Of a stretch of DNA of 64,000 nucleotides, positions 14,342 to 64,000 are shown one piece after another (the stretch's first letter is position 1; each line of letters begins with the position of its first letter). The stretch spans positions 1 to 64,000 of the forward strand of contig ADNK01002961.1 of the NCBI GenBank assembly GCA_000320545.1, in the 5' to 3' direction. Under the pieces are notes generated by a model that ran no database searches, had not been told where the DNA came from, and saw nothing but the letters and a program-made list of their open reading frames with translations. The DNA is from Bigelowiella natans CCMP2755 (Eukaryota > Protista > Cercozoa). The translations under genes and the position numbers were made by a program.

Positions 14342-17300
14342 AATGCAATAGCTCAGCCAAGTATGACTACCACGCCATGTAGATCTTACACAATATGACC
14401 CCATGTGTACGCTGTGCATTACAGGTGATATGGTAGTATTTCGTGAAGAAGTAGTAACGCTTGATAGAGGAGGAATGGCCAACTTCCAAAGTCAACAGCC
14501 GCTCTTACGTCCAAGAACATTGTCGCCTGACCCCGCACCAACGCTGATCGCTCCCCAGACCGTTGGTGCCTGTGACGAAATCGACATCGATGCATCTACC
14601 TCCACAGGGGCTTTCGGCTTGCCTCTGACCTTTGAATGGAGGTACTTTGGCCCTGCTTCCTCGTCGCTGCGGGCGTTTGTGCAGATGCAGGACAGGTCGA
14701 GATTTAGTTTGCTAGGCTCCAACCTCACCGTGGGTGCGCACACATTCAGTGTACGCTATACAAACTGGCTGAACGACAGCTACAGCGCCGAAACGGTCGT
14801 GGTGCGCACACCGATGGATGTGCCTATCGTGACAACGTTTTTCCCTGACTACGTCCAGATAAAAACCTCCCGGGATAACGTTCTCCGCACCGAAATCGAT
14901 GCCTCTTCATGTTCTGTCTCTAAGAGTTCGGCCGTGAATCGAGTCAGTTGGTCATTCTTGGGGCCAAATTCGACGTACCTCCATCCCTCTGTCGATCGAT
15001 ACCGCAAGCACATCACGCCGTTGACAACAGAGACCACACCGAGCCTACCAAACCCTAATTCGGTGTTTCTGAGCATCCCACGTCACACGCTTACGATGGG
15101 GTCTATCTATGCGTTGCAGCTCCGTGTCGAAACGTTCGTCGCAGATGTGAAGCAAATTGGCATAAACTACACATTCATTATGAAGGCTGTGGACGAGCGC
15201 GTTGTGGCGAAGATCGGAGATGGGAGCTTAGCGAGAACCGTCTACGTCCCAAATTTGATTGGCTCGGATGACGATTTTGACGAGGGTTTGAGGCTAGACG
15301 CATCAAAGTCTCATGACCCGGGCTCCCAATATCCTATATCACAATACCATTGGATTATCCAACGCACTGACGACTTCAGCAATGTCCTCCCTTCTACAGG
15401 GAACATCTCCATTATTAGCAACGAATCGATCGCTTATGTGAATCGAAGCACATTGGTGTACGGCAGGTATCGCGTAACTTTGACAGTCTCATGCCTCCCC
15501 GCCTCGGGCCGTTCGTCATCGGCCAGCGACAACAACGCAGTTGCAAATTATGGCAGCGGCAACAACACTAATTGGAGGACTTCAACAGCTATTCAATACA
15601 TACGAATTGTGTCGGTAATGGTACCGAAAGTAACCATAATCCGCAGCACAGTGCCTAAACGCCTTGCTGACGTAGAAAAAGTTACTCCTGGAATGAAGCT
15701 ATCGTTTAGCGCTAATGTTTCTCTCTCTTCAGACTCGCTATACACTTATGCGTGGAGCAGTAACGCCATGCTGAACGACCAGACTTTGTTGACCAAGGAC
15801 ACAAACTGCACGTTGTTAGTACTACGGCCGCACACTCTGACGAGTGGGAAGAGCTATCAATTTCGCTTGATGGTTAGGGATGTGACGAGTGGAACTTATG
15901 CAGAATCCGTTGCGAACGTAGTTGTAAATGCTCCTCCCACTCTTGGCACCTGTTCCGTATCACCAAGTCGCGGGGTGAGCATGCACACCAAGTTTCGTTT
16001 CGGCTGCTCCGAGTGGGCGGACGAAGACGTTCCTTTGCTATTTGAGTTTCGCGACGCGAGCCGATACCCATCCTTCCCTTTGAATAGATTCCAGCAGAAA
16101 TCATACTTTTCGACGCTGCTCTTCGCTCCCAATGAGGATTCGAGGCGGTTCATCGTAGTTGCTCTTGTACAGGACGCGTTAGGCGCTGCTGTGACCTACA
16201 ATGACTCTGCCCTTCACCCGTTAGTTAATGGTCAAGACGGGAGTGTTGGAAATACCCACAGCAATGTTACAGCCTTCCTGAGCGAGATGGAGGCGGCAAG
16301 GGCCATGGGAAACATGATCCGTTTCGGTTTGTACTTCCGCGCAACTCTGGCTTCGGTCGACAAAAGCTCGACGATAGATACGTCTGTGAGAGATAATCTA
16401 TTTAGTTTTGCAGCGGATATAGCTGATGATCCGTCATTGCCCGTAGCTGACGGCTCGAATTTCGCGTTAGAGTTGCTGAGCGAGATTACCGACTTTCCAC
16501 CGGAAAAGCCTGAGGTTCTATCCTCCAACCTCCGCAAGAACATACTTGGACTCCTAGATAGGATGGTTGTAGAAATGGGCAGAAAGGGGGACGGGAGGTC
16601 TTCGGCTCTTGCTCTTGTGGTGGTAACTGCTTCTCGAGTGGCCGACTCAGTAGGAGATATCCGAAAACTTTCCGCCCCGATATCAGCCGCCCGGCTTCCA
16701 AGCAATGTTTCTGACACAGAGCGCATCGCTGTGGCGGAGAAGGTCGAGCAAATGCTGGTGAACGCCACGCATGTCTTGTCTACTACGGTGAGCGTCGGTG
16801 AGCTTGCAGCTAAGCTGTATACACCAAAGGCAGTTCTGTTGGCGCAGAAGTTTGCAGCGGAGAATGCTGCCGGCGCAACTATTGTAGAGTCATTGGATGA
16901 TGAAGCAGGTGACGAGGGGCAGTTGCAATCTATTTCTCAAGAGCAAAAACTATCGATTTCACTGCCTGAGAGCTTCTCTCTCGATGACAATTCTGCCATC
17001 CTCGGGGCATCGGTCGTGTGGCTTAAATCGAGGCCTTATCCTTCCACAGGGTCCTTATCATCTTCGCCGGGAGAAGAAAGCCTGCGTTTGCATTCTCAGC
17101 TGACTATTGAGCTGCAGCAAAATGGCCAAGACTTGGAAGTCAACAATACACAAGATCCAATTGCTCTGAAAATACCATTAGGTGCTGCAGAGGGATTTGA
17201 CTACAGATCTTCTTTTAATCCCGTCGCAGGGGGGGGGTTTACTTGCGAGTATTGGTCTGTGAGCGCCAGGCGCTGGCAAACAGATGGAGTGTTCTTAGCT

Positions 17301-19568
17301 AATATGACGAATGAAACGCGGCCGTGGGAGGGTAGAGCTGAGTGCCATTCCCGTCATCTAACAACGTTCAGAGTAAGCATAAATACGTTCAGTGGAGATA
17401 CCTTGAGGAACCAGGAAGCGTACTCGCTCTCAAACCCCCTCACGCTCTTCCTTGTCTGTCTCATCGGCATTTTTACTGTGGGCATTCTATGTGCGTTCTA
17501 CTACGACCGCTGGTTGTACCTCAAAGGGAGCGCGAAGGCATCTCGCGATTATTGGCGCAAATACAATTGGATGACAGAAGTTCGTCTAGTCAACGATCGA
17601 TCTTGGAAGAGCTATAAAACTAGCTTGCAGTGGGCCTTTGAGAAGAAGCACACGTGGACGGCGGTTCTGCTACGCCACAGCGGGGACTACTTGACCTCCA
17701 CAAAGCGAACGATAATCCTTCTGGTTCTTCTGGTCAACTCGATGACCGTGCTCGCCCTTCTTCTCGAGCAGGAAGCAAAAGTGTTATTCCTCTCCTCTCG
17801 TTCGTCTCTCGCTATTGTCGCCATGATGATGTCCTTTCCTGTACCGATGCTGATGATATATATTCTGCACCGACCTGTGCCTCAAACGTTCATGGTGACT
17901 CATGACATTGCCTCAGCTTCGGCTGGTTGGTTATCCTGGGCATTTTTTGGCCTTCTTCTTCTCCTCGGAGACTTGCAGGTCAATATGGAGATGGGGGGAG
18001 ACGGGGAGATCGATGGCGGTGAGGATGAGGAGATTGAAATAGAGGATGATGAGGGTGATGCGGAGGCGGGGAGGAATGAAGAGCAAGATGACGACGATGA
18101 CGACGACGATAATGCAAATAAAGAAGTTGAAGATCAAGCCAATCGGCTTCGATTGATGGCTCTTCACGGGTCCCAGCTATCCTTAAATCCTGAGGGCGCG
18201 GTCATTGGAGCAGGAATTATTGCAACTCAAGGTGAAAGTATCATTAATAAAAAGAACCAAAGGGAGAAGAGAATGGATAAGAAGAACACTCATCAGGCAA
18301 GTCTGCAGTCATCCTTTCGTGGAATTGGCATGATCAAGCAGAAGTCTCTTCCAGGAATGGTCACGCACAACTCTTCTAGTTTGGGTAGTCCTAAGAAATC
18401 GGAGGAGAAGAGCATCCAACTAGAAAAGGAGCTAAGGATGGCTAATAGGCGGCATTCTCTTAAGCGGATGCGTCAGTTTGAACAATACCGATCTGCGAAC
18501 ATGTCTTCGCTGGCTATGGATAGCAACATCATCACAGTGCGTGCCTTACGAGATATTGGCGACAGCAACAGCAATGTCAGTGATCATAGGGAAGGTGAAA
18601 AGGACGGCCTCATTTGTTGGAGGAAAAACGTGTGCAAGGATGCGGACCCCAGTCTGGAAAATACGCACATCTGGATTCGAAACGATTGTGTCGCTGTTTT
18701 AATCGCATGCCTAGCGGTGCTTGGATGTAGTTTCATCCTCGTCAACCTCAGTTATGAGTTGAAAGAAAAGAATAAAGACTGGGTTGCTGATACGTTGTGG
18801 ATGTTCTTCGTCGATATTGTCTTTAGATCATTTTCCATAGTATTCCTAGAATTTCTTCTTCTTGGGCCTCTCTGCGGCGCGGCTTACTTCATTGCAAACG
18901 ACGAGAAAAATGTCAAAAATAGGAAGCGGATATACGAGAGATGGAACACTATCGTCAAATCGAAGTATTCACAGGAGAACGGTGCTCAGCGTGTAGTGTT
19001 GGCGTTCGCATCCGGTGACACGATCGGGTTTAAATTCCATAAGTGTCGCGTTGTCGATGTAGAGACTGACTCGCAATCACAAAAGCATGGCGTACATAAA
19101 GGATGGAGAATACTTCGAATAAGCGACCAACCGGTTCTAAACGATAGTGAGTTAAGAAAAATACTATTTCGTGCGCACCGTTTACATTCCATGTTCGATG
19201 TCGAATTCGTGCACTTTCCAACCACAAAGCTGCGAGTGCGTGAGGATAAAAGCAACAATAGGAACAGCAACAGCAACAGTAATGTTTCAGCGAGCTTGAA
19301 TCCATCTTCCGTTGTGGAGGACAGTGAGATGACCTGGCTCTCTGATGGCGAATTCAAAGCGCTGCAGCAGAGCGGATCAAAGTGGCAGAGTTTTGTGAAA
19401 GATGAGGTTAAATGGGCAGAGAGCAGGGCAAACTTAATGAAAGAAGCAAGAGGGCGTGCTTTACGAGATTTTCTTCATCTTACGAACAGCGAAGTTGACG
19501 ATTTCGGTGATGGTGATTCGGCGTCGGAGCTTAGCTCTGAGCCTGGGGAAATCAGCGTGTCTTGTTAA
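7071..19568 (+). CDS. Giant polycystin-1-like receptor: signal peptide, NHL repeats, RCC1/BLIP-II-like repeats, P/T/S stalk, REJ, GPS, multiple TMs, acidic loop, PDZ-like tail
   Basis: MQPWFLLVLC.. at 7071. NHL-like exons at 7.5-10.4 kb (HRIRKLDL, LYVGDKSNLRKI). AALKKDGKVVTWG..YGGDSS repeats at 10.6-13.5 kb. In-frame GT-AG joins from 13490 via 13730 and 14185 to 14425. REJ (NAPPTLGTCSVSP), GPS (CEYW..W..C.SRHLTTF), PDZ-like GFKF..VVDV..GV.KGWRI. Frame break near 11810. Confidence 0.8.
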
Positions 19569-53995: not shown

Positions 53996-54386
53996 CTGCA
54001 ATTTTGCCCTACACCATTGATCGTGATGAATCGCTCAGCATTTGCATGCATGTAGCAACACATCAATGACGTGATAGCTAGGTTAGCTTTTGCAACAAAT
54101 GAGGCACAGCTTAGGCTTGCTATCGGGAGATAAAAAAAAAAACAAATTAAAAATCAACTAATTCAAATTGGTCTCGCATCCTCTTTGGAAGAGAGACATG
54201 TCAACATTGACATAGAGAGTTTTCTGTTCATTGTTCTTCTCATTTTAGTTGTGAGTTAACCCAAAACTCAGAATGGATACTAGATGTTGTCTTCGCTCTG
54301 ACGAAAAAAAAACAAGGTTTCAATTTTGAAATAATGTGCCATGACAATGTGTATCCAGCACGTCTAGATGTGAAGTACAAGCACGG

Positions 54387-57127
54387 TTAACAACTGTGTA
54401 CCAAAGCTTCATCCACAGTTGATCTACAACCATAACACATTCGAATGTGTCCTACTCTTGGGCGGCCTATTTGTAAATAGGTAACTTATGTGGACTCATA
54501 GGAAAGAACTTTTATGATATATCTGCATTAAGTAAATCGATTTTGTAACTCCTATATTTCATTCCACACCACTGATTGGCATGAGATCCGATCCGACTTT
54601 TAATGTGCAGTTGTTACAAAATATTCCTATATACATTTGTACTAATAGCAGAAATTACAACATAGAAGTTGATCAATTTGATACTTACGTCCACATATTC
54701 GACAGTGATGCCTCCGAAAGAATAGTGAGAACGTTCTTAGACAAATCTTAGGTATTCATCAAAGTTATTTTTAAAATATAATACCAGTGATCTAGATTAC
54801 ATGGCACTCAAGAACGTGATCATTCTTTTCCCAGTGCATCCTAGTCTGTGCAAGCTTTGTAAATAGCTTCCTCAGGTCTTCTAGCTGAAATTAAGTTCAT
54901 TGTAATTGATAACGATTATAGAACGGAAAATATATATTTGTCTAACCTGCAGTGACTTTTGCATTGGCGTGACTCTAATATCCAACTCGTTGCGATGCCC
55001 GATTTCTATTCTATTGATCAATCTTTTCTCACTGGACTTTTTCCTAAGAGCAAACAGCCAAAAACATATATAATAATGTGTACAGATAATTATGTTTTAC
55101 TTATTATCAAACCGTTCATCATCAAGGCTCCTAAGTTGCAGTTTGCTTGATTTGAGATTTGTAGGTGCAGAGACCACACTATGAATTTTTATATAGTTTT
55201 TTGCTTAAAATTAATTATATATTTATTCATTATGAACTATCATACTAAACCTGGTTGAATCCTGTCCTACTTTGCATACTTTTTGTTCTGATTCATTCAG
55301 AGTCGATCTCGGCATTGTCTTATTTTCCATATCGGGTGAGGCGGAAGTTCTTAACTATTTAATGTAGACTAATTAATACCTTGAAAAGACAACTTTAGCC
55401 ATATATAATTACATCGACGTTCAAAAGATTATGGATAATGAAGTTTTGTTTCTTTCATAGCGTATATTCTTTCTTTGCAAATACATATATGAATTTTGCA
55501 TACCGCCAGGTGTTGAAGATCCCTAACCTAAACATGAGAGTAAAATAAATGATTGTAAACAAGATATTAAAATAGTAGCTTAGAAAATCATAACCGTCAT
55601 TCTACTTCTTCGCGACATGCTCAATTCGCTGCAAGATAATTTCAAAGATCAGATTTTCCCTAAGATTTAAATATTAACTTACTGGGGAATAGGTTGGCTC
55701 TCCCGTGATCTTGACGGCGACTCTGGTCTTATACTATTATTTCTGCCCCCATTAGGTTAGGGAATGGATATTCTATACAGGCTTCGTTTAAACTAGGTTA
55801 CCTTTCATGACGAATGTAGTAATCCAGTGGAAGAATAACAGATTCGCTTACACTTTCTCTAACAGGCACCGTTCTGAATAGTTACACTTAAATGTAATAT
55901 GCAACTCTTATTAACTTATTGATGAAGTTATGTTTGTAGACTCTTAAAAATATGAAAAATGATATTGGGTTGATACTTATCGATGTGTTCAGGAATCACT
56001 GTCGGAATTTTTGCATGGGGAAGCTGTTTATGGCACAGATGACTTAGCTCTTTCTTAAATGAAATTCAAGTTTAAATGTATACCTGAGCATCGGATGACA
56101 CTCGCGCTGGTTCAACTGAAAACTTGCTATGCTCATAGTCTATAGTAACCAAAACATTAGCTTTCACATAAGGAAAATTATGGTTCATATGTGGCGCTCC
56201 ACCGTTTTCATAAGCATAATTTTCAGCATCATCGCTTTCACTACTCCTTGCCAATGAAACAGACTGTAACGGTAATACTGCATTAACCGAAAGAAATTTG
56301 AGTTTATGATGTATAATACCGTCTCCATTGTTTGAGCAGAAAAAAATCCATGCTTTTTCACCCTAATCACAACGCTGTTATGCATATGTTTTAACTGTAC
56401 AAAATCCTTACTTGAAGAGATCTTTAATATTTTTGCTTTTATGCTGATGATGCTTTGACTTGCTAGAACTACTAAATCTATTAAAGCTCGCCAGCATCTC
56501 AGCTCTTAGTGGAACCTCCCCACGTATCTTTTGTAATTCCTCCCTTTAATTAAAGTATTCAAAAGCAATTAAAACCCACATGGATAATACTGATAATCTA
56601 ATAATACTTATTTTACCAGAGGCGCGTAGCTTCATTAATAGCATTTTGAGCTATTCTTTTCATTTCCTTTCGTCATTGGTCCAGCATATTATAAAACTTC
56701 ATACAACAAGTTATAAGAGAGTTCTGAGTACCAGATAATCCGACTTTGCAACAAGCTCGGCATTAAGGGATCCCGATGCACTGCATGATCTTAACATCTT
56801 ACGATTTTTCCCTCGCATGCTTTAGAACATATAATTTAGCATCGGTAAAATCAAACTCATATGCCTCAGATAATCATTTTACCTGCACCGATGACAATAC
56901 ACATGACCACATGTTTTACAACATGTTCCTTCTCTGCCGTTTGTGATTGCCGTGTAGCAGGAAGAACAACGGTCAGGCGTACTCATTAATAGAGGCGGTA
57001 TTACTTTGGAAACTGTTAGAATACAATGGTGCATACCTCATGCGCATATCAAAACCTACAAGCAAATCTCTTCGTTACCATTCCGTTTTTCCTCTCTTGC
57101 CCCGTAGCGTAGACCGTTGGACTCCAT
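54387..57127 (-). CDS. FYVE zinc-finger protein (canonical C-terminal FYVE, degenerate N-terminal FYVE-like finger), many short introns
   Basis: Spliced C-terminus MHWEKNDHVLECH/ICLRTFSLFFRRHHCRICG/RIFCNNC../..RMCYGC, stop at 54387-54389; N-terminus CSSC..CCKTCGHVYCHRC. Middle exons not fully resolved. Confidence 0.8.
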
Positions 57128-57410
57128 ACGCGTGTTTTGTTCATCCAATTGTAGGTCGATTATGATGCGCGACACACAAAAAGCATACCAAATCAACTTG
57201 CTTTCGCTCCCGAAATCGACGCGAAAAAATAAAAAAGGGGAGGGCGACAAGGAATGCTGGGAAAAAACACGACGAACGTTTTGCTGTTGGAGTTCATCGG
57301 AATCGTGCCTCGAGAGTAAAGTAAAATCAGTGCGCAAACAGTTTCGCGACAGCGACAGAATGCACGTTTTGGGGATTAATCGCCTCCGTTCTTACATTCT
57401 CAATACAACA

Positions 57411-59128
57411 ATGGCGCTTATGCAGGTTTTTTTGTTTGTTGCATGGTGGAATGTCCTGTGGAGTATAGACAGGAATAGCTTAGGCATTGTGCTTTCGTAC
57501 TGTTTGTTGTAAGCGGATGCTGGGTTTCTGGATTAGATAATGTTTTTCCTTGAATAAAATGAGACCGTTAATGTCTATCTATAAGGCCAGGGCTGACTTC
57601 GCGTTCAAAGATGATGATGTAAAATTACCCTAATTCTTTATTGGAACAATATATTTAGATTAACTCTAAATTGTTAGGATCAAGATGGCATTCTCGAAAT
57701 GCAGATTGGAGACATCATCACAGTAATTTTACATTTTTTTGATTTTCTACTTTTCGACTTAACCCGCTTTCTACATATGTGCAGATTATCGAAGAGGGCG
57801 ATGAAGGAGGTTCATGATTTCTAACCCTTCAACTCCTTCGTGACAAGCAATAATGTGCGCTGTTCTGATAGGATGGTGGAGAGGAAAGTTAAATGGAGTA
57901 GAAGGTAAGCTTTCGTACAACTATACAATGCAATCTCAGTTATGTGTTATGTGTATATTAGGATTTTTCCCCATCACCTACTGCACCATTCTAAGGGGTA
58001 TTTAAAATAACAGTAGCATTAACCAAATTTGTGTTGGCATACTATGTTCTCAATATCCAAATAATCAAAAACTATATATCAGATGAGGAAGTGGTATCAC
58101 GCGAACGAGTTGAGGTACTGAATCGATTGGGCAGTTTAAAGTCAGTCACTTTAATCATTTCACATACTCATTGGTTATCGCCAGAGTACTTCTATAGCTG
58201 CTGTATCGATCGTATCTCCAAGAGATGCATCCGGATTGGGCTCTTTTGGTGAAAGCTCAAGAGGTATTTATTTTGTCGACTCTTTGTAGGTTGAACTCCA
58301 AACATAAACAAAAGATCCTACCATCCCAGACATTAAAAGTTCTCTGCTCGCCAAAGAAAGGTAGTTATGCATTTATATTATCAACTATATCTGAAAAACG
58401 TTTTCATTTTATAACCACAGGAAGGATGGGCCACCTCCTTTGCCTGCTTTCCATAAACATAAAATCTCGGTCGGTGAATAAATAAAAGGGATTCCATATT
58501 AAGTTGTGCCGTGAACAAAATATTATTCCGGCATCGTTGAGATATACTTACATTCAAGTCTTTTAATTACATATTCAATTTGCATTCATAAGGTCTTGAC
58601 TGATATGAGCTCGTTGATATCCCGCTCAAGAGCTAACTCAAGAAACTTGGAGATCAAAAAGTGATCATCTTGCAAATATATCAGTTCACATGTGATAGAT
58701 CACGCTTTTCCATATGATTTGTTATGATTCTCAGCAAGCCTGCAGTTTACAGTACAAGGAGGTAATCATTAACTTTTACTTCAATGAAAATGACCATTAG
58801 TCTATAAGAATTGATGATCATACTCCAGCGCATCCAATAGCCAAACACGCATGTATGGAGGAGGTCCGAAGACCAAAAAGTAACATCGTATTAATGAGTT
58901 GCAATAGAAACTACAAATGTTTAAGAGATACTTCACTAGGATGGGAATCTTAGGCCTCGATACAAGAGTCAAAGTTCCGACTCAATTCAACGTTTGGGGT
59001 TTGAAATATAAAATCACTGAATAAAACCTAAATTTCTGAATAAAGTGTAAGCCATGCTTTAAGGGTTACGTTTATCACATTAGCAAAAAATATGGCGATT
59101 ATCAGTTCACTATATTGCATTATTCTCG

Positions 59129-59167
<39 letters not shown>

Positions 59168-62100
59168 TATAACTGTACAATATCGTTAATAAGTACATGT
59201 TAATCTTATAGATTTTGTGCGCTAATATGGGGAGGTGTCGAAGAAAGGTTTGCCTGTTGGTTTTGCAATTAAGCACACCTGAAAACTCGTATTTCAATTG
59301 CAGATTTGGCCTTACTTATGGCATTGTGGGATCGTACACAATCATGCTTGGTTCTGCAATCAAATTATGATAATGATTTATGAGTCTTTCATTAGTTTGA
59401 TGCGATTTTTCTGGCAGGAGTATATATTTATCTTTTCGAGAAGGTACTGTTTACGACACGCAGCCCAAGGTAGCATCCACATAATTTCAGTTGAACAAGC
59501 GTAAAATATATTCTTCAGTGCTATACCTTACCGAGGGCTAATGTATTTTATCGTTGGATTTCCACTATTCATCGCTTATCCAACAATAATAGCTGGGGTA
59601 ATCTTTGAAACCATTTTTGTCTCAAAAAATATAATCGTTACACGTCTTAGGTTTGTGTATACATTACTGGATTTGTTCAATGTGTATCTGCATTCTATGA
59701 AGAATCGGTGCAAACTTAACATACACGGTAATTTTGTGTGAAGATAGTGAATAAATGCGTATGCTAGGTAAAGCCAAAGAAACGGAAGACAATGGCTAAA
59801 GCTGCTCCAGTAAAACCTACTGGCGACGCAACAGATTCTAAATCCCGTAAATATACAAATCTAACGGTTGTATTCGCTTATTTTGACTTTTTGTTTTTTG
59901 GCGGTAAGCTGTTACAGCTAGTAAGATGAAAATACTTGCCAGTAATGGAGGAGTGGATCTTGTGGAACAAGATAGTAGCACTTGGTGTGAGGTTCTATTC
60001 ACAAATTATGTTCTATATGTATTGAATTTAAAAGTTAAATTAACTTAAAGAGCTTGAAAGCATGGTTAATTTACTTGCAAAATACGAACAAACTTGGAAC
60101 TAAGGTTATTACGCTTTCATGCTGCATAAGAATGTTATCGAGTACGTGACTGGAAATACCACCATTTACTTCTTAGTTGTTTATTCTTACCTACATCATC
60201 GGGAATATCATAATCTTCATCTTTGCTGTAAGATAATTTAGATGCTTTTGGATTGTTCTGAGTGGTCGTTTTAATTTCGTCAGTTACAACTTTGGTTCAT
60301 GATCAATGACGAACTTGACGTAACAGAATCAAATAGAACCAAATCCTTTGTAAACAATACCTACATGTAATGTATGAAAAATAAACTAACACCAGGAAGA
60401 AGATAGGATTAGTGGGGCTGGACCTTTTGCAAAGGGGTACCTTTTTTGACGGTTCCAACCTACATTCGTTAAAATCTTGAATGGTAGGTTTGGATGGACA
60501 CTAGACTTCAACTGCGCGATGATTCTTGTAATCCGTTGAGAAATATAAATATATAAATGCGATGTTAGCTTGGAAATGATGGAACTTGTTTTTAACTTTA
60601 AGGTTCCAGTGTGCCGGAATCTCTTGTCCATTATTTACGATTTTTCCAACTCAGGGGTTGTCTGATTCAATAATACATATCACAAATGTGCTAAGCAATA
60701 TTTTCCAATAATTGTAGTATTGCCTCGGAAAATGCTTGGCTCCTATCGTAAACTTAAAACCTGCCAATGTTTTGAGCCTGTGGAAGTTCAATGTTATACT
60801 TCAGGTGACATTCATTCCTGTGGATAAAAACATTGCTTTCCATAAATTCATCGCTTATATTATGGCAGGGTAACTCATTAAGTTTATAAGTTCTATGCTG
60901 TTTAAGAATTGATATTGATTTATATTTTATTACCATGAATAGGTGTGCCGCTGGACATATGTTTTTCCATTTTGTAAGATCTGATGGTAAAATTTCGTTA
61001 AATGAAGCTAAGAGTTTCTTAAATTCAGATAAACTACATTTTGAGACCGGACCAGACAATAAGTCTTTTCGGGGTTGCATTTACAATTTCATATCTCATT
61101 AGGAATTTAAACATTATCTGACTTTACTTAAGATTGTACCATGGTATACCGGAGGACTTATTGTTGTGTGCATCTTTGTCATATTTTCTGGAGGGCAAAG
61201 TATGTGAATTGGCCAAAATTATTTTGGTTAAAAGGAATAAGATTTTAAATATGCTTAGGAAAGGTTCGGAGGAAACAGTTCGAAATATTTTGGTAAAATT
61301 GGTAAAGTTCTATTCGATCTCCCCTTAAATACAATAATACAGGTACACACACATATTTGTATTTCCTCTTTTCTTCATTCTACTTCTGATTCATGGAAAA
61401 GGAGGTATTCCAAATACATCTGCATCGAGGCAATTGCTGTGTAATTTGATGCATTATTTAAACTAGGATGGAATCCGAATTTCTGGAAGTGGTACGGTAT
61501 TCCAGTGAAACTCAGTTTACTTTGATTTACTTTGATGATAATATATAAGGTTCATAGTACCTGCTGTAATGTATGCAGCTGAGCGTATTGTAACTATTCG
61601 AAGAACACGGAAACCGGTTGTTCCTCCTTAATCAAGTTTTGTTGACAACTTGTTTTAATTTTTAGTCTAAGATTTATTTATCTAAAATATAGGTTACGTT
61701 ACTGTCAGTGACATCAATGAAGCCAAATGTATTTTCGTTGGAGATTGAAAAGGTGTATCTCTGGTTTAATACGTGTATTTCACTTATTCTAGTTTTATAT
61801 TTTAAGTCTGGTCCGTTCGAAATGAAAACAAATGGCCGGGAACCTTACTTTGAAGGTATCAGAGTTGTTAGTTGCGGCAATGAAATTATATTATTTTGGT
61901 CATTGCGAAGGTCAATACTGTTTTATCAATTGCCCGCATTTGTCCCAGTTCCAGTGGCATCCCTTCACGTAATCCTATTTCATGTGTGCACTGATTTGAT
62001 TCTGATGCAGATTGCTTTTCTTTTAGCATTTCATCTGCTCCCTCCGACAAAACTATTACATTCCATATTCGTAAATCGATTCCAGGGTAAAATTAACCAT

Positions 62101-63738
62101 GAGAATAATAAGTGAAATGATTATTTTACGTAATTAATTTTGCAGATCATGGACTGATGAGCTTCATGAGTATGTTGCAAACGGGATTGAATACTGACTT
62201 AACATTTAAAACAAGTAAATATATTTCACAGCTATCTTCTATCTCTTGGAAACTCTAAGAGCGGAAGAGTAACATTCTCAAGGAATAATGGAGCACAAAG
62301 GGTAATAATATTTCGGTTAGGTTTAGTCATTATCATGTGTTATCTTCTATTGGTTATGAAGGTTTCTGGCAAAATCATTGGTCCAGACGGATTGCCCCTG
62401 CTTAAAATTGATGGCCCGCATTCAGCCCCGACCCAGCACATATCGAAATATAAGAATGTCATGGTGATTGGAGCAGGTATTTTTTCTTTTTATCGGTTAA
62501 TGAATAGCATATATACTTAATTCGTTTATAGGTATAGGAGTCACTCCGGTTGCTTCCGCTTCCAAAAGTGTGGTGTGTAAGTTTGGACAACATTTTATTC
62601 TTGCGTCATTTAATTCAGAGTCTTAATCAGGTTTTCCATAAGTGGCGTACTGCAGTGGGAGAAGTATTCCCAAATAATGGTCGCTTCATTTTCAGTAATA
62701 TGCTTTCGCTACTTAAAGTTTTTTTTTAAATTATTCGTTAGGCTATTTCTACTGGGTTGTGAGCCACAGAGATGTGGATTCGTTCAGATGGTAGTATTCA
62801 TCTGAATGAAAAATGCCAGTTACTGAAATTCTTAAATGTGTATAGGTTAATTCGTTTGATAAAAGATTGTCAAGATGAAGTAGATTTCAATTATCAATGT
62901 GGTCTTCAAAAATACATGAATCAAATTAACGATAGGTCAGCCATCAGAGATCAAAGGCGGCTTCAGTTTATGTAAGCATTTTATTAAGAAAAGGTTTTTT
63001 GCTCATCGCCATTTGTTCTAATATCTTAGCAACACAAGTTCGAATTCCATATATTCGTAACCTCGGCAAAAAATCCAAAGCCAGTCAAGTTGCACATTGC
63101 CAAAGAGGATGTATGGATATATTCATATAAACTCTTAGGCAACAAATTAAGTATAATCTGCCTATAGGAATTATCTTTCTGGGGGGCTAGAACAGAGGAA
63201 GGGGGTATTGCAAAGGCTAAAGGACCCTTTGATGAGTCGACACTATATTCTGCTCTTAAGTGTCCTATTTTTGGAGAGGTGTCCAGATTCTTAGTATATA
63301 AAATTTCTGATTGACATGTAGACCGATGTAGGTGAAACAACTTGGTAATGTTTACGTCCACAATGGTCGGCCGAATTGGAGGGCTGAATTTGCTCGTGTA
63401 AAGGTATCATTTGAACTTATGTTCACTTTTAAGCTTCTTTAATATCCTTATATCGCTTCAGGCATACCATCCTGAAAGCACAGTTGGCGTGGCATTCTGC
63501 GGAAACGAGCACATTGCGAAAGATTTGAAGCGGTAGTGCTATCTATCAATTTTATTGAAATCAAATTATAAAGAGCGTTTAGTTGTTTTGAACTGTTCCA
63601 AAAGTATGTCAAACACCATGGCATCATTAGTTATAAAATATCCAGAAATAATTATCTTCCTTTCTTTGCAGACAATCGGCCGCTTTTAGTAATGTGGAAC
63701 AGAACAGCTTGTTTAGACTCCACCTTGAAAACTTCTAA
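57411..63738 (+). CDS. NADPH oxidase with fused N-terminal SH3 and p22phox-like domains; dozens of ~50-70 nt introns
   Basis: SH3 ARADFAF..LEMQIGDIITII..GGWWRGKLNGVEGFFPITYC; heme motifs FHKFIAYIMAGCAAGH and FEIFWYTH..LIHG; FAD motif QWHPFTISSAP; NADPH motifs DGPH, GAGIGVTP, YFYWV, GRPNW, FCG and terminal ENF*. Confidence 0.92.
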
Positions 63739-64000
63739 GTCACATATCAGATGATGCAGTTTCATTCCTACGTTTATTATGTTGTGATCATCATAAATTA
63801 GTTCGCATTATCAAGTTTTTCAACCAATTACAATTTGCGCATTGGTGTCACCTCTTTCACCTTTCATTTCGGTCAGTACAACATGCAAGCTGTCATCATG
63901 ATGTGTCACAACATCGACGTGTCAGCGTAATGCACAGAATGATTCGAATCATCACAACATGCCAAATCAAATGATTGGAACCCCTGTGTGTCAAACTCAT

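What the first reader, a model, noticed from the sequence alone, without database searches (positions are those of the whole stretch)
57411..63738. Single-chain NADPH oxidase: SH3 + PPPLP + p22phox-like + gp91phox-like
Seen, by manual GT-AG splicing in one frame: SH3, a linker with DGPPPLPAF, then exons at 58940-59707 giving QFNVWAKNMAIISSLYCIILGFCALIWGGVEERFGLTYGIVGSYTIMLGVYIYLFEK..IPYRGLMYFIVGFPLFIAYPTIIAGVCVYITGFVQCVSAFYEE, then a full Nox core; no EF-hands were seen. Established: human p22phox reads WAMWANEQALASG..GAYSIVAGVFVCLLEY..YVRAVLHLLLSVP..ATILG..LAAVRGE and is colinear with this segment. NOX2 needs separate p22phox and SH3-bearing p47/p67phox subunits, with p47phox SH3 binding a p22phox Pro-rich motif. 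Inference: both flavocytochrome b558 chains and an SH3-PxxP switch are fused in one self-contained oxidase. I do not know this architecture from characterised Nox families.
Basis: partly seen in the sequence, partly recalled or inferred. Interest (0 to 1): 0.85.

Follow-up and report, generated by a model that had tools for sequence, protein, structure and literature searches.

The report
SH3-p22phox-like-NOX single-chain oxidase
A 53-exon gene of the alga Bigelowiella natans encodes in one protein an SH3 domain, a four-helix membrane domain truly related to human p22phox, and a NOX2-like NADPH oxidase, so the two subunits of animal cytochrome b558 form one chain here, as in a large protist oxidase family for which I found no published description.

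Summary
Window 57559-63738 (+) can be read as one open frame of 53 GT-AG exons (937 codons, no internal stop). It encodes SH3, a linker with PPPLP, a four-helix membrane block, a polybasic linker and a NOX2-like core. A profile of 39 homologous blocks, built without the window gene, hits human p22phox at E=3e-11 (next hit 0.65). Its AlphaFold model has the p22phox chains as best PDB matches (Z 13.9/13.6, next 10.7). The buried Glu53 and Arg90 of p22phox correspond to the family's invariant Glu and near-invariant Arg.

The fusion itself is shown on relatives. A paralog in this genome has TM2-4 plus the whole NOX core in one uninterrupted exon, and a spliced 2.6-kb transcript matches that paralog. 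A complete transcript from another species runs straight through the junction. No reads or transcript of the window gene could be obtained.

A complex prediction places block TM1/TM4 against NOX TM3-TM5, as in NOX2-p22phox (0.62, best control 0.00).

The proposed SH3-PxxP switch is not supported, because the motif is not conserved. "Self-contained" is untested.

The architecture occurs in at least 73 fetched protist NOX proteins forming one clade (Rhizaria, stramenopiles). I found no paper describing it. The scan has not reported it on other DNA.

The parts
57559..57997 (+). SH3 domain, five exons (57559-57618, 57678-57722, 57785-57809, 57872-57904, 57962-57997). An alternative start is the ATG at 57571.
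   Evidence: Frame-consistent GT-AG exons. P0054, built from these exons, scores SH3_9 8e-10, SH3_1 4.7e-08 and SH3_2 1e-07, all above the Pfam cut-offs. The ligand-binding positions (ALYDF-like, GWW, FPxxY) are conserved across 35 family SH3 domains.
58083..58879 (+). Low-complexity linker, seven small exons. Exon 58421-58469 encodes KDGPPPLPAFHKHKIS.
   Evidence: Manual GT-AG model, partly confirmed by the ortholog-guided alignment. This is the least certain part of the model because the linker is not conserved. PxxP is not conserved in the family.
58940..59707 (+). p22phox-like four-helix membrane domain, seven exons (58940-58998, 59084-59129, 59212-59247, 59304-59350, 59418-59469, 59519-59597, 59651-59707).
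   Evidence: Searched exon by exon, the stop-free pieces match the family profile A2 (built without this gene) collinearly, at profile positions 3-16, 5-35, 30-40, 43-61, 55-74, 75-108 and 102-122. The scores are 2.9, 19.2, 2.1, 6.8, 8.4, 29.5 and 14.3 bits; four of the seven pieces are individually weak (E 0.026 to 2.4), so the case rests on their collinear order and the three stronger pieces. Both ortholog-guided alignments give identical exon borders. A2 hits human p22phox at E=3e-11.
59708..59767 (+). Junction intron (60 nt, GT-AG, phase 0 on both sides) between the p22-like block and the rest.
   Evidence: If this intron were retained, the frame would stop at 59717-59719 after SVQT. An in-frame ATG at 59792 lies only about 70 nt further on. 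That Met is a Lys in the ortholog transcript P0034, whose sequence runs through the junction.
59768..60104 (+). Polybasic linker (KPKKRK...) and a conserved helix preceding NOX TM1, three exons (59768-59846, 59918-59991, 60051-60104).
   Evidence: Ortholog-guided spliced alignment with P0034 and P0046. The conserved LxxW...N..K.G motif is seen in the family tails.
60177..61616 (+). NOX six-TM haem domain, 14 exons. It carries the four haem-ligand His (AFHKF, HMFFHF, WYTHIF, LIHGKGG).
   Evidence: Ferric_reduct scores 1.1e-11 in P0054. These His columns are invariant in alignment A3.
61693..62301 (+). FAD-binding domain exons, including HPFT in exon 61911-61968.
   Evidence: FAD_binding_8 scores 1.1e-15 in ortholog P0034. 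The Augustus model P0054 skips the HPFT exon.
62362..63738 (+). NADPH-binding domain exons, including GIGVTP in exon 62532-62572, CGNEH, and the C-terminal HLENF followed by the stop codon.
   Evidence: NAD_binding_6 scores 1.3e-18 in P0054. Exon borders.

Best explanation
Window 57559-63738 (+) is one intact gene of Bigelowiella natans with about 53 exons. Its product of about 937 residues is a single-chain flavocytochrome of the cytochrome b558 type.

Domain order, N to C: a canonical SH3 domain; a disordered linker; a four-helix membrane domain homologous to p22phox; a polybasic cytosolic linker; and a NOX2-like core with six TM helices, two haems, and FAD and NADPH domains.

Likely mechanism (inferred). 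TM1 and TM4 of the p22-like domain pack in cis against TM3-TM5 of the NOX haem domain. This gives the stabilising scaffold that p22phox supplies in trans to NOX1-4. The core passes electrons from NADPH through FAD and two haems to O2 outside the membrane. The cytosolic SH3 domain docks a proline-rich partner or regulator. This reverses the polarity of the animal system, where the membrane subunit carries the Pro-rich motif and p47phox carries the SH3 domains.

Shown here: the open frame and its domains; p22phox homology of the block; the fusion in a paralog mRNA and in an ortholog mRNA.
Inferred: packing in cis, superoxide production, the role of SH3, and transcription of the window copy as one mRNA.
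For: (1) One open frame across 53 GT-AG exons, with a phase-0/phase-0 junction intron.

(2) Paralog L003/L009 on contig C1058 has TM2-TM4 of the block plus Ferric_reduct, FAD_binding_8 and NAD_binding_6 in one stop-free 695-codon exon. SH3 and TM1 lie together in the exon before it. The 2644-nt transcript contig L012 matches that locus at 99.7-100% in three blocks, with two introns removed. It encodes the 833-aa protein P0001, which is SH3 + block + NOX.

(3) P0034, a complete MMETSP transcript ORF of 998 aa from another species, is collinear with every window exon and continuous through the junction.

(4) Profile A2 (39 blocks, window gene excluded) against 177,635 PDB sequences finds human p22phox at E=3e-11 (46.8 bits), covering chain residues 4-141. 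The next hit is at E=0.65. PF05038 is the most frequent Pfam family among members, jointly with COPI_assoc (13 of 39 each), and has the lower best E-value, 7.7e-5.

(5) The AlphaFold2 model of the block has pLDDT 90 and four helices. In Foldseek the three best of 350,542 PDB chains are p22phox (TM-score 0.63-0.68, E 1.4e-3; next 0.16). In VIA-align, p22phox scores Z 13.9 and 13.6 (rmsd 2.0-2.5 A), and the next chain scores 10.7.

(6) The family's invariant Glu and near-invariant Arg align with p22phox E53 and R90. A conserved Tyr aligns with H94, and a polar residue (Asn in the family consensus, Gln in the window) aligns with Y121. These are the caged polar network and chronic granulomatous disease (CGD) mutation hotspots described in PMC9711523.

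(7) Complex prediction with the block against the NOX TM domain gives ipSAE 0.62 and a best control of 0.00. That mark was reached by 51 of 78 solved complexes and by 2 of 108 mismatched pairs. The runs agree in at least 87% of contacts, and the partner pLDDT is at least 70. The contacts are block residues 10-41 (TM1) and 97-107 (TM4) with NOX residues 127-139 (TM3) and 157-181 (TM4, loop D, start of TM5). These are the same helices as in NOX2-p22phox (PMC9568551, PMC9711523).

(8) The NOX core of P0034 is closest to human NOX2 (2.2e-56), ahead of NOX5 (2.8e-38) and DUOX1.
Against: Read-through of the junction intron would give a stop at 59717-59719, followed by an in-frame ATG at 59792. A two-product reading is therefore formally possible.

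Individual family members stay below the Pfam gathering score for PF05038 (16.8 bits for P0034, cut-off 25). A language-model look-up put 'Flower/Cg6151-P' clusters (0.85) slightly above p22phox clusters (0.82), all under its 0.9 trust level.

The complex prediction may reflect memory of the solved NOX2-p22phox complex. Enzyme activity and product (superoxide versus metal reduction) are untested.

The p22phox C-terminal Pro-rich tail, the long ICL1 loop and the NOX TXXT motif are all absent.
Confidence: 0.85

Rival explanations
1. There are two genes. An SH3-p22phox-like membrane protein ends at the stop at 59717-59719, and a separate NOX starts at the ATG at 59792. The two subunits would then be neighbours rather than fused in this window.
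For: Retention of the 60-nt junction intron gives an in-frame stop, and an in-frame ATG with a reasonable context follows. There are no reads for this gene.
Against: Only about 70 nt would separate the stop from the start. The intron is canonical GT-AG, of typical length, and phase 0 on both sides. The Met is a Lys in the ortholog transcript, which is continuous here. The paralog has the block and NOX in one exon and one spliced mRNA. All 73 block-bearing relatives placed in the tree are fused.
Confidence: 0.05
2. The four-helix block is a generic N-terminal membrane extension, like the extra helices of fungal and plant ferric reductases. It only resembles p22phox by composition and by the common four-helix fold.
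For: Four-helix bundles are common. Unrelated bundles reach Z about 10. The per-sequence Pfam scores are sub-threshold. The Atlas feature search favoured another small 4-TM family.
Against: The profile E-value is 3e-11, more than ten orders of magnitude better than the next PDB sequence. p22phox is the top structural hit in two independent aligners, with 19-21% identity against 3-6% for the other bundles. The family's invariant residues coincide with the p22phox E53/R90 network. The predicted interface uses the same helices as the real complex.
Confidence: 0.06
3. The protein is a metalloreductase (FRE-type) rather than a ROS-producing NADPH oxidase.
For: Activity was not measured. The family belongs to the ferric-reductase-domain superfamily. 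The window ortholog group has an atypical TM5 His spacing of 14 residues instead of 13.
Against: The best solved relative is NOX2, by a wide margin over the other families. TM3/TM5 His spacing is NOX-like in 32 of 35 members. The protein ends in the NOX-typical ...ENF, and it carries a p22phox-type partner domain, which is otherwise known only with NOX1-4 and NoxA.
Confidence: 0.12
4. The N-terminal SH3 binds the PPPLP motif of its own linker and so auto-inhibits or activates the oxidase, making it independent of cytosolic subunits.
For: SH3 and a PxxP motif lie about 55 residues apart in the same chain. The SH3 ligand-binding residues are conserved. No p67phox/NoxR-like TPR+PB1 gene was seen among five PB1 loci.
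Against: PxxP is absent from the linker in 14 of 35 SH3-bearing members, including the B. natans paralogs P0001 and P0005. Only 8 of 35 have a class I/II consensus, and there is no positional conservation. Many family members have the block but no SH3. The search for cytosolic partners was shallow.
Confidence: 0.12

Closest known systems
Human cytochrome b558: the NOX2 (gp91phox) - p22phox heterodimer (PDB 8GZ3, 7U8G, 8KEI)
   Same: The NOX core is closest to NOX2. The four-helix partner is homologous to p22phox in sequence profile and in fold. The equivalents of the E53/R90 buried polar pair are conserved. The predicted contact uses partner TM1/TM4 and NOX TM3-TM5.
   Different: It is one polypeptide instead of two. 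The p22-like domain lies N-terminal to NOX and is joined to it by a polybasic linker. It lacks the C-terminal proline-rich tail that docks p47phox, and its TM2-TM3 loop is short. An SH3 domain sits on the membrane protein itself. The TXXT motif of NOX TM4 is replaced by SGGQ or similar.
Fungal NoxA/NoxB with NoxD (Pro41), and Dictyostelium NoxA-C with a p22phox-like protein
   Same: These are calcium-independent NOX enzymes paired with a small p22phox-type four-TM partner outside animals (cited in PMC9421330 and PMC2121648).
   Different: In those systems the partner is a separate gene product. In the tree, fungal NOX proteins fall outside the fused clade. No NoxR/p67-like gene was found here, though the check was shallow.
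DUOX1 with its extra M0 helix
   Same: An additional N-terminal helix of the same chain packs at the site where p22phox binds NOX2 (stated in PMC9568551). This is a precedent for occupying that surface in cis.
   Different: DUOX has a single helix, a peroxidase-like ectodomain and EF-hands. It has no four-helix p22phox homolog.
Naegleria gruberi NOX homologs with an SH3 domain (architecture M17 in PMC3591440)
   Same: A protist NOX that carries an SH3 domain in the same chain.
   Different: There the SH3 lies inside the C-terminal NADPH-binding domain, and no p22phox-like domain is reported.

Membership tests
p22phox / Cytochrom_B558a (PF05038) | Significant sequence-profile similarity over the whole membrane region | tested here: met
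   The family profile A2 against human p22phox gives E=3e-11 (46.8 bits), covering profile positions 8-131 and chain residues 4-141. The next PDB sequence is at E=0.65. The window's own seven exons match A2 collinearly.
p22phox / Cytochrom_B558a (PF05038) | A single sequence passes the Pfam gathering score (25 bits) | tested here: not met
   P0034 scores 16.8 bits (E 0.0053). The best of 39 members reaches E 7.7e-5, and 13 of 39 hit at all. The window exon pieces alone gave no hit, and the own-genome scan with PF05038 found only low-complexity DNA. This is therefore a divergent relative, not a member by Pfam's rule.
p22phox / Cytochrom_B558a (PF05038) | Four-helix transmembrane bundle of the p22phox fold | tested here: met
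   The AlphaFold2 model has pLDDT 90, with helices at 12-40, 45-69, 80-94 and 99-117. p22phox chains are the top matches in Foldseek and in VIA-align, at Z 13.9 and 13.6 against 10.7 for the next chain.
p22phox / Cytochrom_B558a (PF05038) | Caged polar network (N11, E53, R90, H94, Y121), a CGD hotspot | tested here: met
   The E53 equivalent is invariant and the R90 equivalent is at least 90% conserved. H94 aligns with a conserved Tyr. Y121 aligns with Asn in the family consensus, Gln in the window and His in P0034. The network is as described in PMC9711523. The N11 equivalent is shifted by one residue.
p22phox / Cytochrom_B558a (PF05038) | Binds NOX TM3-TM5 through its own TM1 and TM4 | tested here: met
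   This rests on prediction only. ipSAE is 0.62 and the best control is 0.00 (mark reached by 51 of 78 solved complexes and 2 of 108 mismatched pairs). Interface residues map to block TM1 and TM4 and to NOX TM3, TM4, loop D and TM5. The result may be helped by memory of the solved complex.
p22phox / Cytochrom_B558a (PF05038) | C-terminal proline-rich region that docks the tandem SH3 domains of p47phox/NOXO1 | tested here: not met
   After TM4 the chain continues with E-E-x-x-P, a Lys/Arg-rich stretch, and then NOX TM1. There is no PRR at that position.
p22phox / Cytochrom_B558a (PF05038) | Separate small subunit of about 190 residues | tested here: not met
   It is fused in frame to NOX in the window model, in the paralog mRNA and in 73 relatives. 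No stand-alone copy was seen in the genome.
NOX family NADPH oxidase (NOX2-like) | Ferric_reduct, FAD_binding_8 and NAD_binding_6 domains in order | tested here: met
   P0054 scores Ferric_reduct 1.1e-11 and NAD_binding_6 1.3e-18, while its FAD domain is weak because the HPFT exon was skipped. Ortholog P0034 passes all three cut-offs. HPFT and GIGVTP are present in window exons.
NOX family NADPH oxidase (NOX2-like) | Four haem-ligand His in TM3 and TM5 | tested here: met
   All four His columns are invariant in the 35 sequences of A3. The TM3 pair is 14 apart. The TM5 pair is 13 apart in 32 members and 14 apart in the window's ortholog group.
NOX family NADPH oxidase (NOX2-like) | Produces superoxide or H2O2 from NADPH and O2 | not testable with these tools
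   Needs expression and an enzyme assay.
SH3 domain | Passes the Pfam SH3 models and keeps the ligand-binding residues | tested here: met
   P0054 scores 38.9 bits for SH3_9 (cut-off 30), 33.0 for SH3_1 (22.9) and 31.9 for SH3_2 (21.8). The ALYDF-like, GWW and FPxNY positions are conserved in the family.

The most novel reading that the evidence does not exclude
The fused state is ancestral. On this reading p22phox began as the N-terminal membrane domain of an early eukaryotic NOX, and the free-standing p22phox/NoxD of animals, fungi and amoebae arose by gene fission. That would answer the open question of where p22phox came from. The alternative is a single fusion in an ancestor of the Rhizaria and stramenopile lineages. 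My tree shows one clade of fused enzymes but cannot root the event.
Probability: 0.25. Interest if true: 0.8.

Novelty: new variant of a known kind. Interest (0 to 1): 0.68.

Why it matters
p22phox is the obligatory partner of NOX1-4 and a chronic granulomatous disease gene. Recent surveys state that it is restricted to opisthokonts (PMC9421330) and that its origin is unknown (PMC3591440).

A recognisable p22phox homolog now appears in Rhizaria and stramenopiles, always covalently joined to a NOX2-like core. This moves the NOX-p22phox partnership far outside Amorphea. It also makes the fission-versus-fusion question testable by phylogeny.

The family offers natural single-chain versions of cytochrome b558. 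These are useful for expression, structure work and dissecting what p22phox contributes, because stoichiometry and assembly are built in.

The N-terminal SH3 suggests an inverted docking logic for cytosolic regulators, which could be followed up in algae where extracellular superoxide production is ecologically relevant.

Tried and rejected
- **Pfam on single window exon pieces.** This gave nothing useful because the exons are too short.
- **PF05038 scan of the genome.** It hit only low-complexity DNA on C1578 and C3082. The A2 scan's weak hits on C3301 and C1043 were also low-complexity.
- **Searching with P0054.** This found no transcript-derived protein of the window gene.
- **Searching the large protein collection with profile A2 for free-standing p22-like proteins.** It returned only one N-terminal fragment from Amorphochlora. 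That search depends on word matches, so the blank says little.
- **ESM Atlas feature search.** It gave only sub-threshold leads: Flower/Cg6151-P at 0.85 and p22phox at 0.82.
- **Cluster look-up.** It gave no organism names for the unnamed relatives.
- **Search for a p67phox/NoxR-like gene through PB1.** The five best loci are NBR1/p62-like, bZIP or PB1-only, with no TPR+PB1. The check was shallow and is inconclusive.
- **A mistaken guess of mine.** I thought the longer block of the Ochromonas-type subgroup mimicked the long ICL1 of p22phox. The insert is actually a Cys-rich stretch in the TM1-TM2 outer loop.
- **My first manual exons after 59768.** The versions running to 59903 and 59943-59991 were wrong and were replaced by the ortholog-guided ones.
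- **The joined spliced product.** It was not sent to any search, family, fold or complex tool. I concatenated the exons only inside a local script, to count stops, length and motif positions. All searches used exon pieces by reference or database proteins.

Full report
**Source and limits**

The window is contig C776 of a 91.4-Mb assembly. This is confirmed here: the protein jgi/Bigna1/144420 (P0054) matches window exons at 100% identity.

I therefore have no RNA reads for this gene.

The joined product was never sent to a search, fold or complex tool. It was concatenated only inside a local script, to count stops and length.

**The observation**

I first built a manual GT-AG model. I then refined it with a spliced protein-to-genome dynamic programme guided by two orthologs (P0034, P0046). 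The two guides gave the same exon borders from 58998 onward except at 59846-59951 and 61404-61752.

The final model has these properties:
- 53 exons between 57559 and 63738
- 2814 coding bases, giving 937 codons
- no internal stop
- only GT-AG introns, 49-139 nt long (median 59.5)

P0054 is made only of window residues, although it skips several true exons. It passes the Pfam cut-offs for three SH3 models, Ferric_reduct and NAD_binding_6, and has no EF-hand.

**Is it one chain?**

The junction intron (59708-59767) is 60 nt long, canonical, and phase 0 on both sides. If it were retained, the frame would stop at 59717-59719, and an in-frame ATG follows at 59792. A two-gene reading therefore had to be tested.

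The decisive evidence comes from relatives.
- A PF08030 scan of the genome found NOX paralogs. One of them, on C1058, is a stop-free 695-codon exon.
- That exon begins with a sequence collinear with TM2-TM4 of the window block and then continues into Ferric_reduct, FAD_binding_8 and NAD_binding_6.
- The exon upstream of it carries SH3 and TM1 together.
- The transcript contig L012 (2644 nt, JGI/MMETSP) aligns to this locus at 99.7-100% in three blocks, with two introns removed. It encodes the complete 833-aa protein P0001, which is SH3 + block + NOX. The fusion is thus proven at mRNA level in the same genome.
- P0034 is a complete 998-aa transcript ORF from another species; only short DNA matches link it to the window. 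It is collinear with the window gene and runs straight through the junction. It carries Lys where the window has the in-frame Met.

No transcript-derived protein of the window copy itself is in the collection.

**Is the block p22phox-like?**

I aligned 39 blocks from relatives, leaving out the window gene (A2).
- Sequence profile: against all PDB sequences, the A2 profile finds only human p22phox with significance. The hit is E=3e-11 (46.8 bits), covers chain residues 4-141, and the next sequence is at E=0.65.
- Pfam: PF05038 is the most frequent family among members, level with COPI_assoc at 13 of 39 each. Its best E-value, 7.7e-5, is the lower of the two, and each single sequence stays below the gathering score. 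That explains why the domain is unannotated.
- Window exons: searched one by one, the seven window exons match A2 collinearly at profile positions 3 to 122. The individual scores run up to 29.5 bits, but four of the seven pieces are weak on their own (2.1 to 8.4 bits).
- Structure: AlphaFold2 folds the block into four helices at pLDDT 90. Foldseek ranks three p22phox chains first among 350,542 chains. An exhaustive VIA-align search gives p22phox Z 13.9 and 13.6, against 10.7 for the best unrelated bundle.
- Key residues: the family's invariant Glu and near-invariant Arg align with p22phox E53 and R90. A conserved Tyr aligns with H94, and a polar residue aligns with Y121. This is the buried polar network that is a CGD mutation hotspot (PMC9711523).

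**How it probably works**

The NOX core keeps four invariant haem His, HPFT, GIGVTP and the terminal ENF. Among solved chains it is closest to NOX2 (2.2e-56, against 2.8e-38 for NOX5).

I folded the block and the NOX TM domain as two chains. They scored ipSAE 0.62, with a best control of 0.00. That mark was reached by 51 of 78 solved complexes and 2 of 108 mismatched pairs. The runs agree in at least 87% of contacts, and the partner pLDDT is at least 70.

The contacting residues map to block TM1 and TM4, and to NOX TM3, TM4, loop D and the start of TM5. These are the helices that form the human NOX2-p22phox interface. Because that complex is solved, the prediction shows likeness rather than proof.

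I infer that the block acts as an in-cis p22phox that stabilises the haem domain.

The SH3 domain keeps its ligand-binding residues. The PPPLP motif, however, is not a conserved feature. Only 21 of 35 linkers have any PxxP, 8 have a class I/II motif, and the B. natans paralogs P0001 and P0005 have none. The p22phox C-terminal Pro-rich tail is absent.

**Spread and novelty**

Of 121 fetched NOX proteins, 77 carry the block. At least 35 of those have SH3 in front of it.

In a tree built from the NOX core alone, all 73 block-bearing rows form one clade (SH-aLRT 99). Fungal NOX, plant RBOH and a rotifer enzyme fall outside it. Only the Plasmodiophora model lies inside the clade without a block.

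Named members are B. natans (four genes: the window, two on C1058, one on C2351), Amorphochlora, Mucochytrium and Ochromonas. The sample is biased because it was seeded with a fused query.

The searched literature has no description of a natural p22phox-NOX fusion. One survey says p22phox is restricted to opisthokonts (PMC9421330). Another says its origin is unknown (PMC3591440).

I class this as a new variant of a known kind. It is a well-supported architecture whose function is inferred.

Noticed in passing
window 57559-63738, compared with L009 (G000:C1058:19022-21909, minus strand): Intron density differs sharply between paralogs. The window gene has 52 introns in 6.2 kb, with exons of 24-115 nt. 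The C1058 paralog has only two introns and a 2.1-kb exon.
   Followed up: partly
G000:C1058, about 19.0-21.9 kb (minus) and from about 25.4 kb (plus); loci L009, L010, L015, L020: Two fused NOX paralogs (P0001 and, probably, P0005) lie head to head about 3.5 kb apart. This looks like an inverted tandem duplication.
   Followed up: no
window exon 61343-61404 (WYTHIF...LIHGKGG): The TM5 haem-ligand His pair is 14 residues apart, with a Pro in between, in the window gene and its three orthologs. It is 13 apart, as in NOX2, in the other 32 of 35 family members.
   Followed up: partly
P0073-P0087 (Ochromonas-type subgroup), for example P0077 residues about 143-185: There is a Cys-rich insert of about 41 residues in the outer TM1-TM2 loop of the p22-like block.
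   Followed up: partly
P0045 (Plasmodiophora brassicae, 579 aa): It sits inside the fused clade but has no block or SH3. This is either a truncated gene model or a secondary loss.
   Followed up: no
window 59131-59160: A (TA)n microsatellite lies inside the intron between block exons 59084-59129 and 59212-59247.
   Followed up: no
window, from about 54000 to 64000: GC content falls from 0.45-0.52 to 0.34-0.37 over the last 10 kb, coinciding with the intron-dense gene.
   Followed up: no
window 14403-19568 (+): An uninterrupted 1721-codon ORF. It was not examined.
   Followed up: no
L023-L027 (G000 contigs C253, C1217, C474, C607, C2458): The PB1-domain genes of this genome that I looked at are NBR1/p62-like (ZZ, N_BRCA1_IG), bZIP-linked or PB1-only. 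None has TPR+PB1 like p67phox/NoxR.
   Followed up: partly
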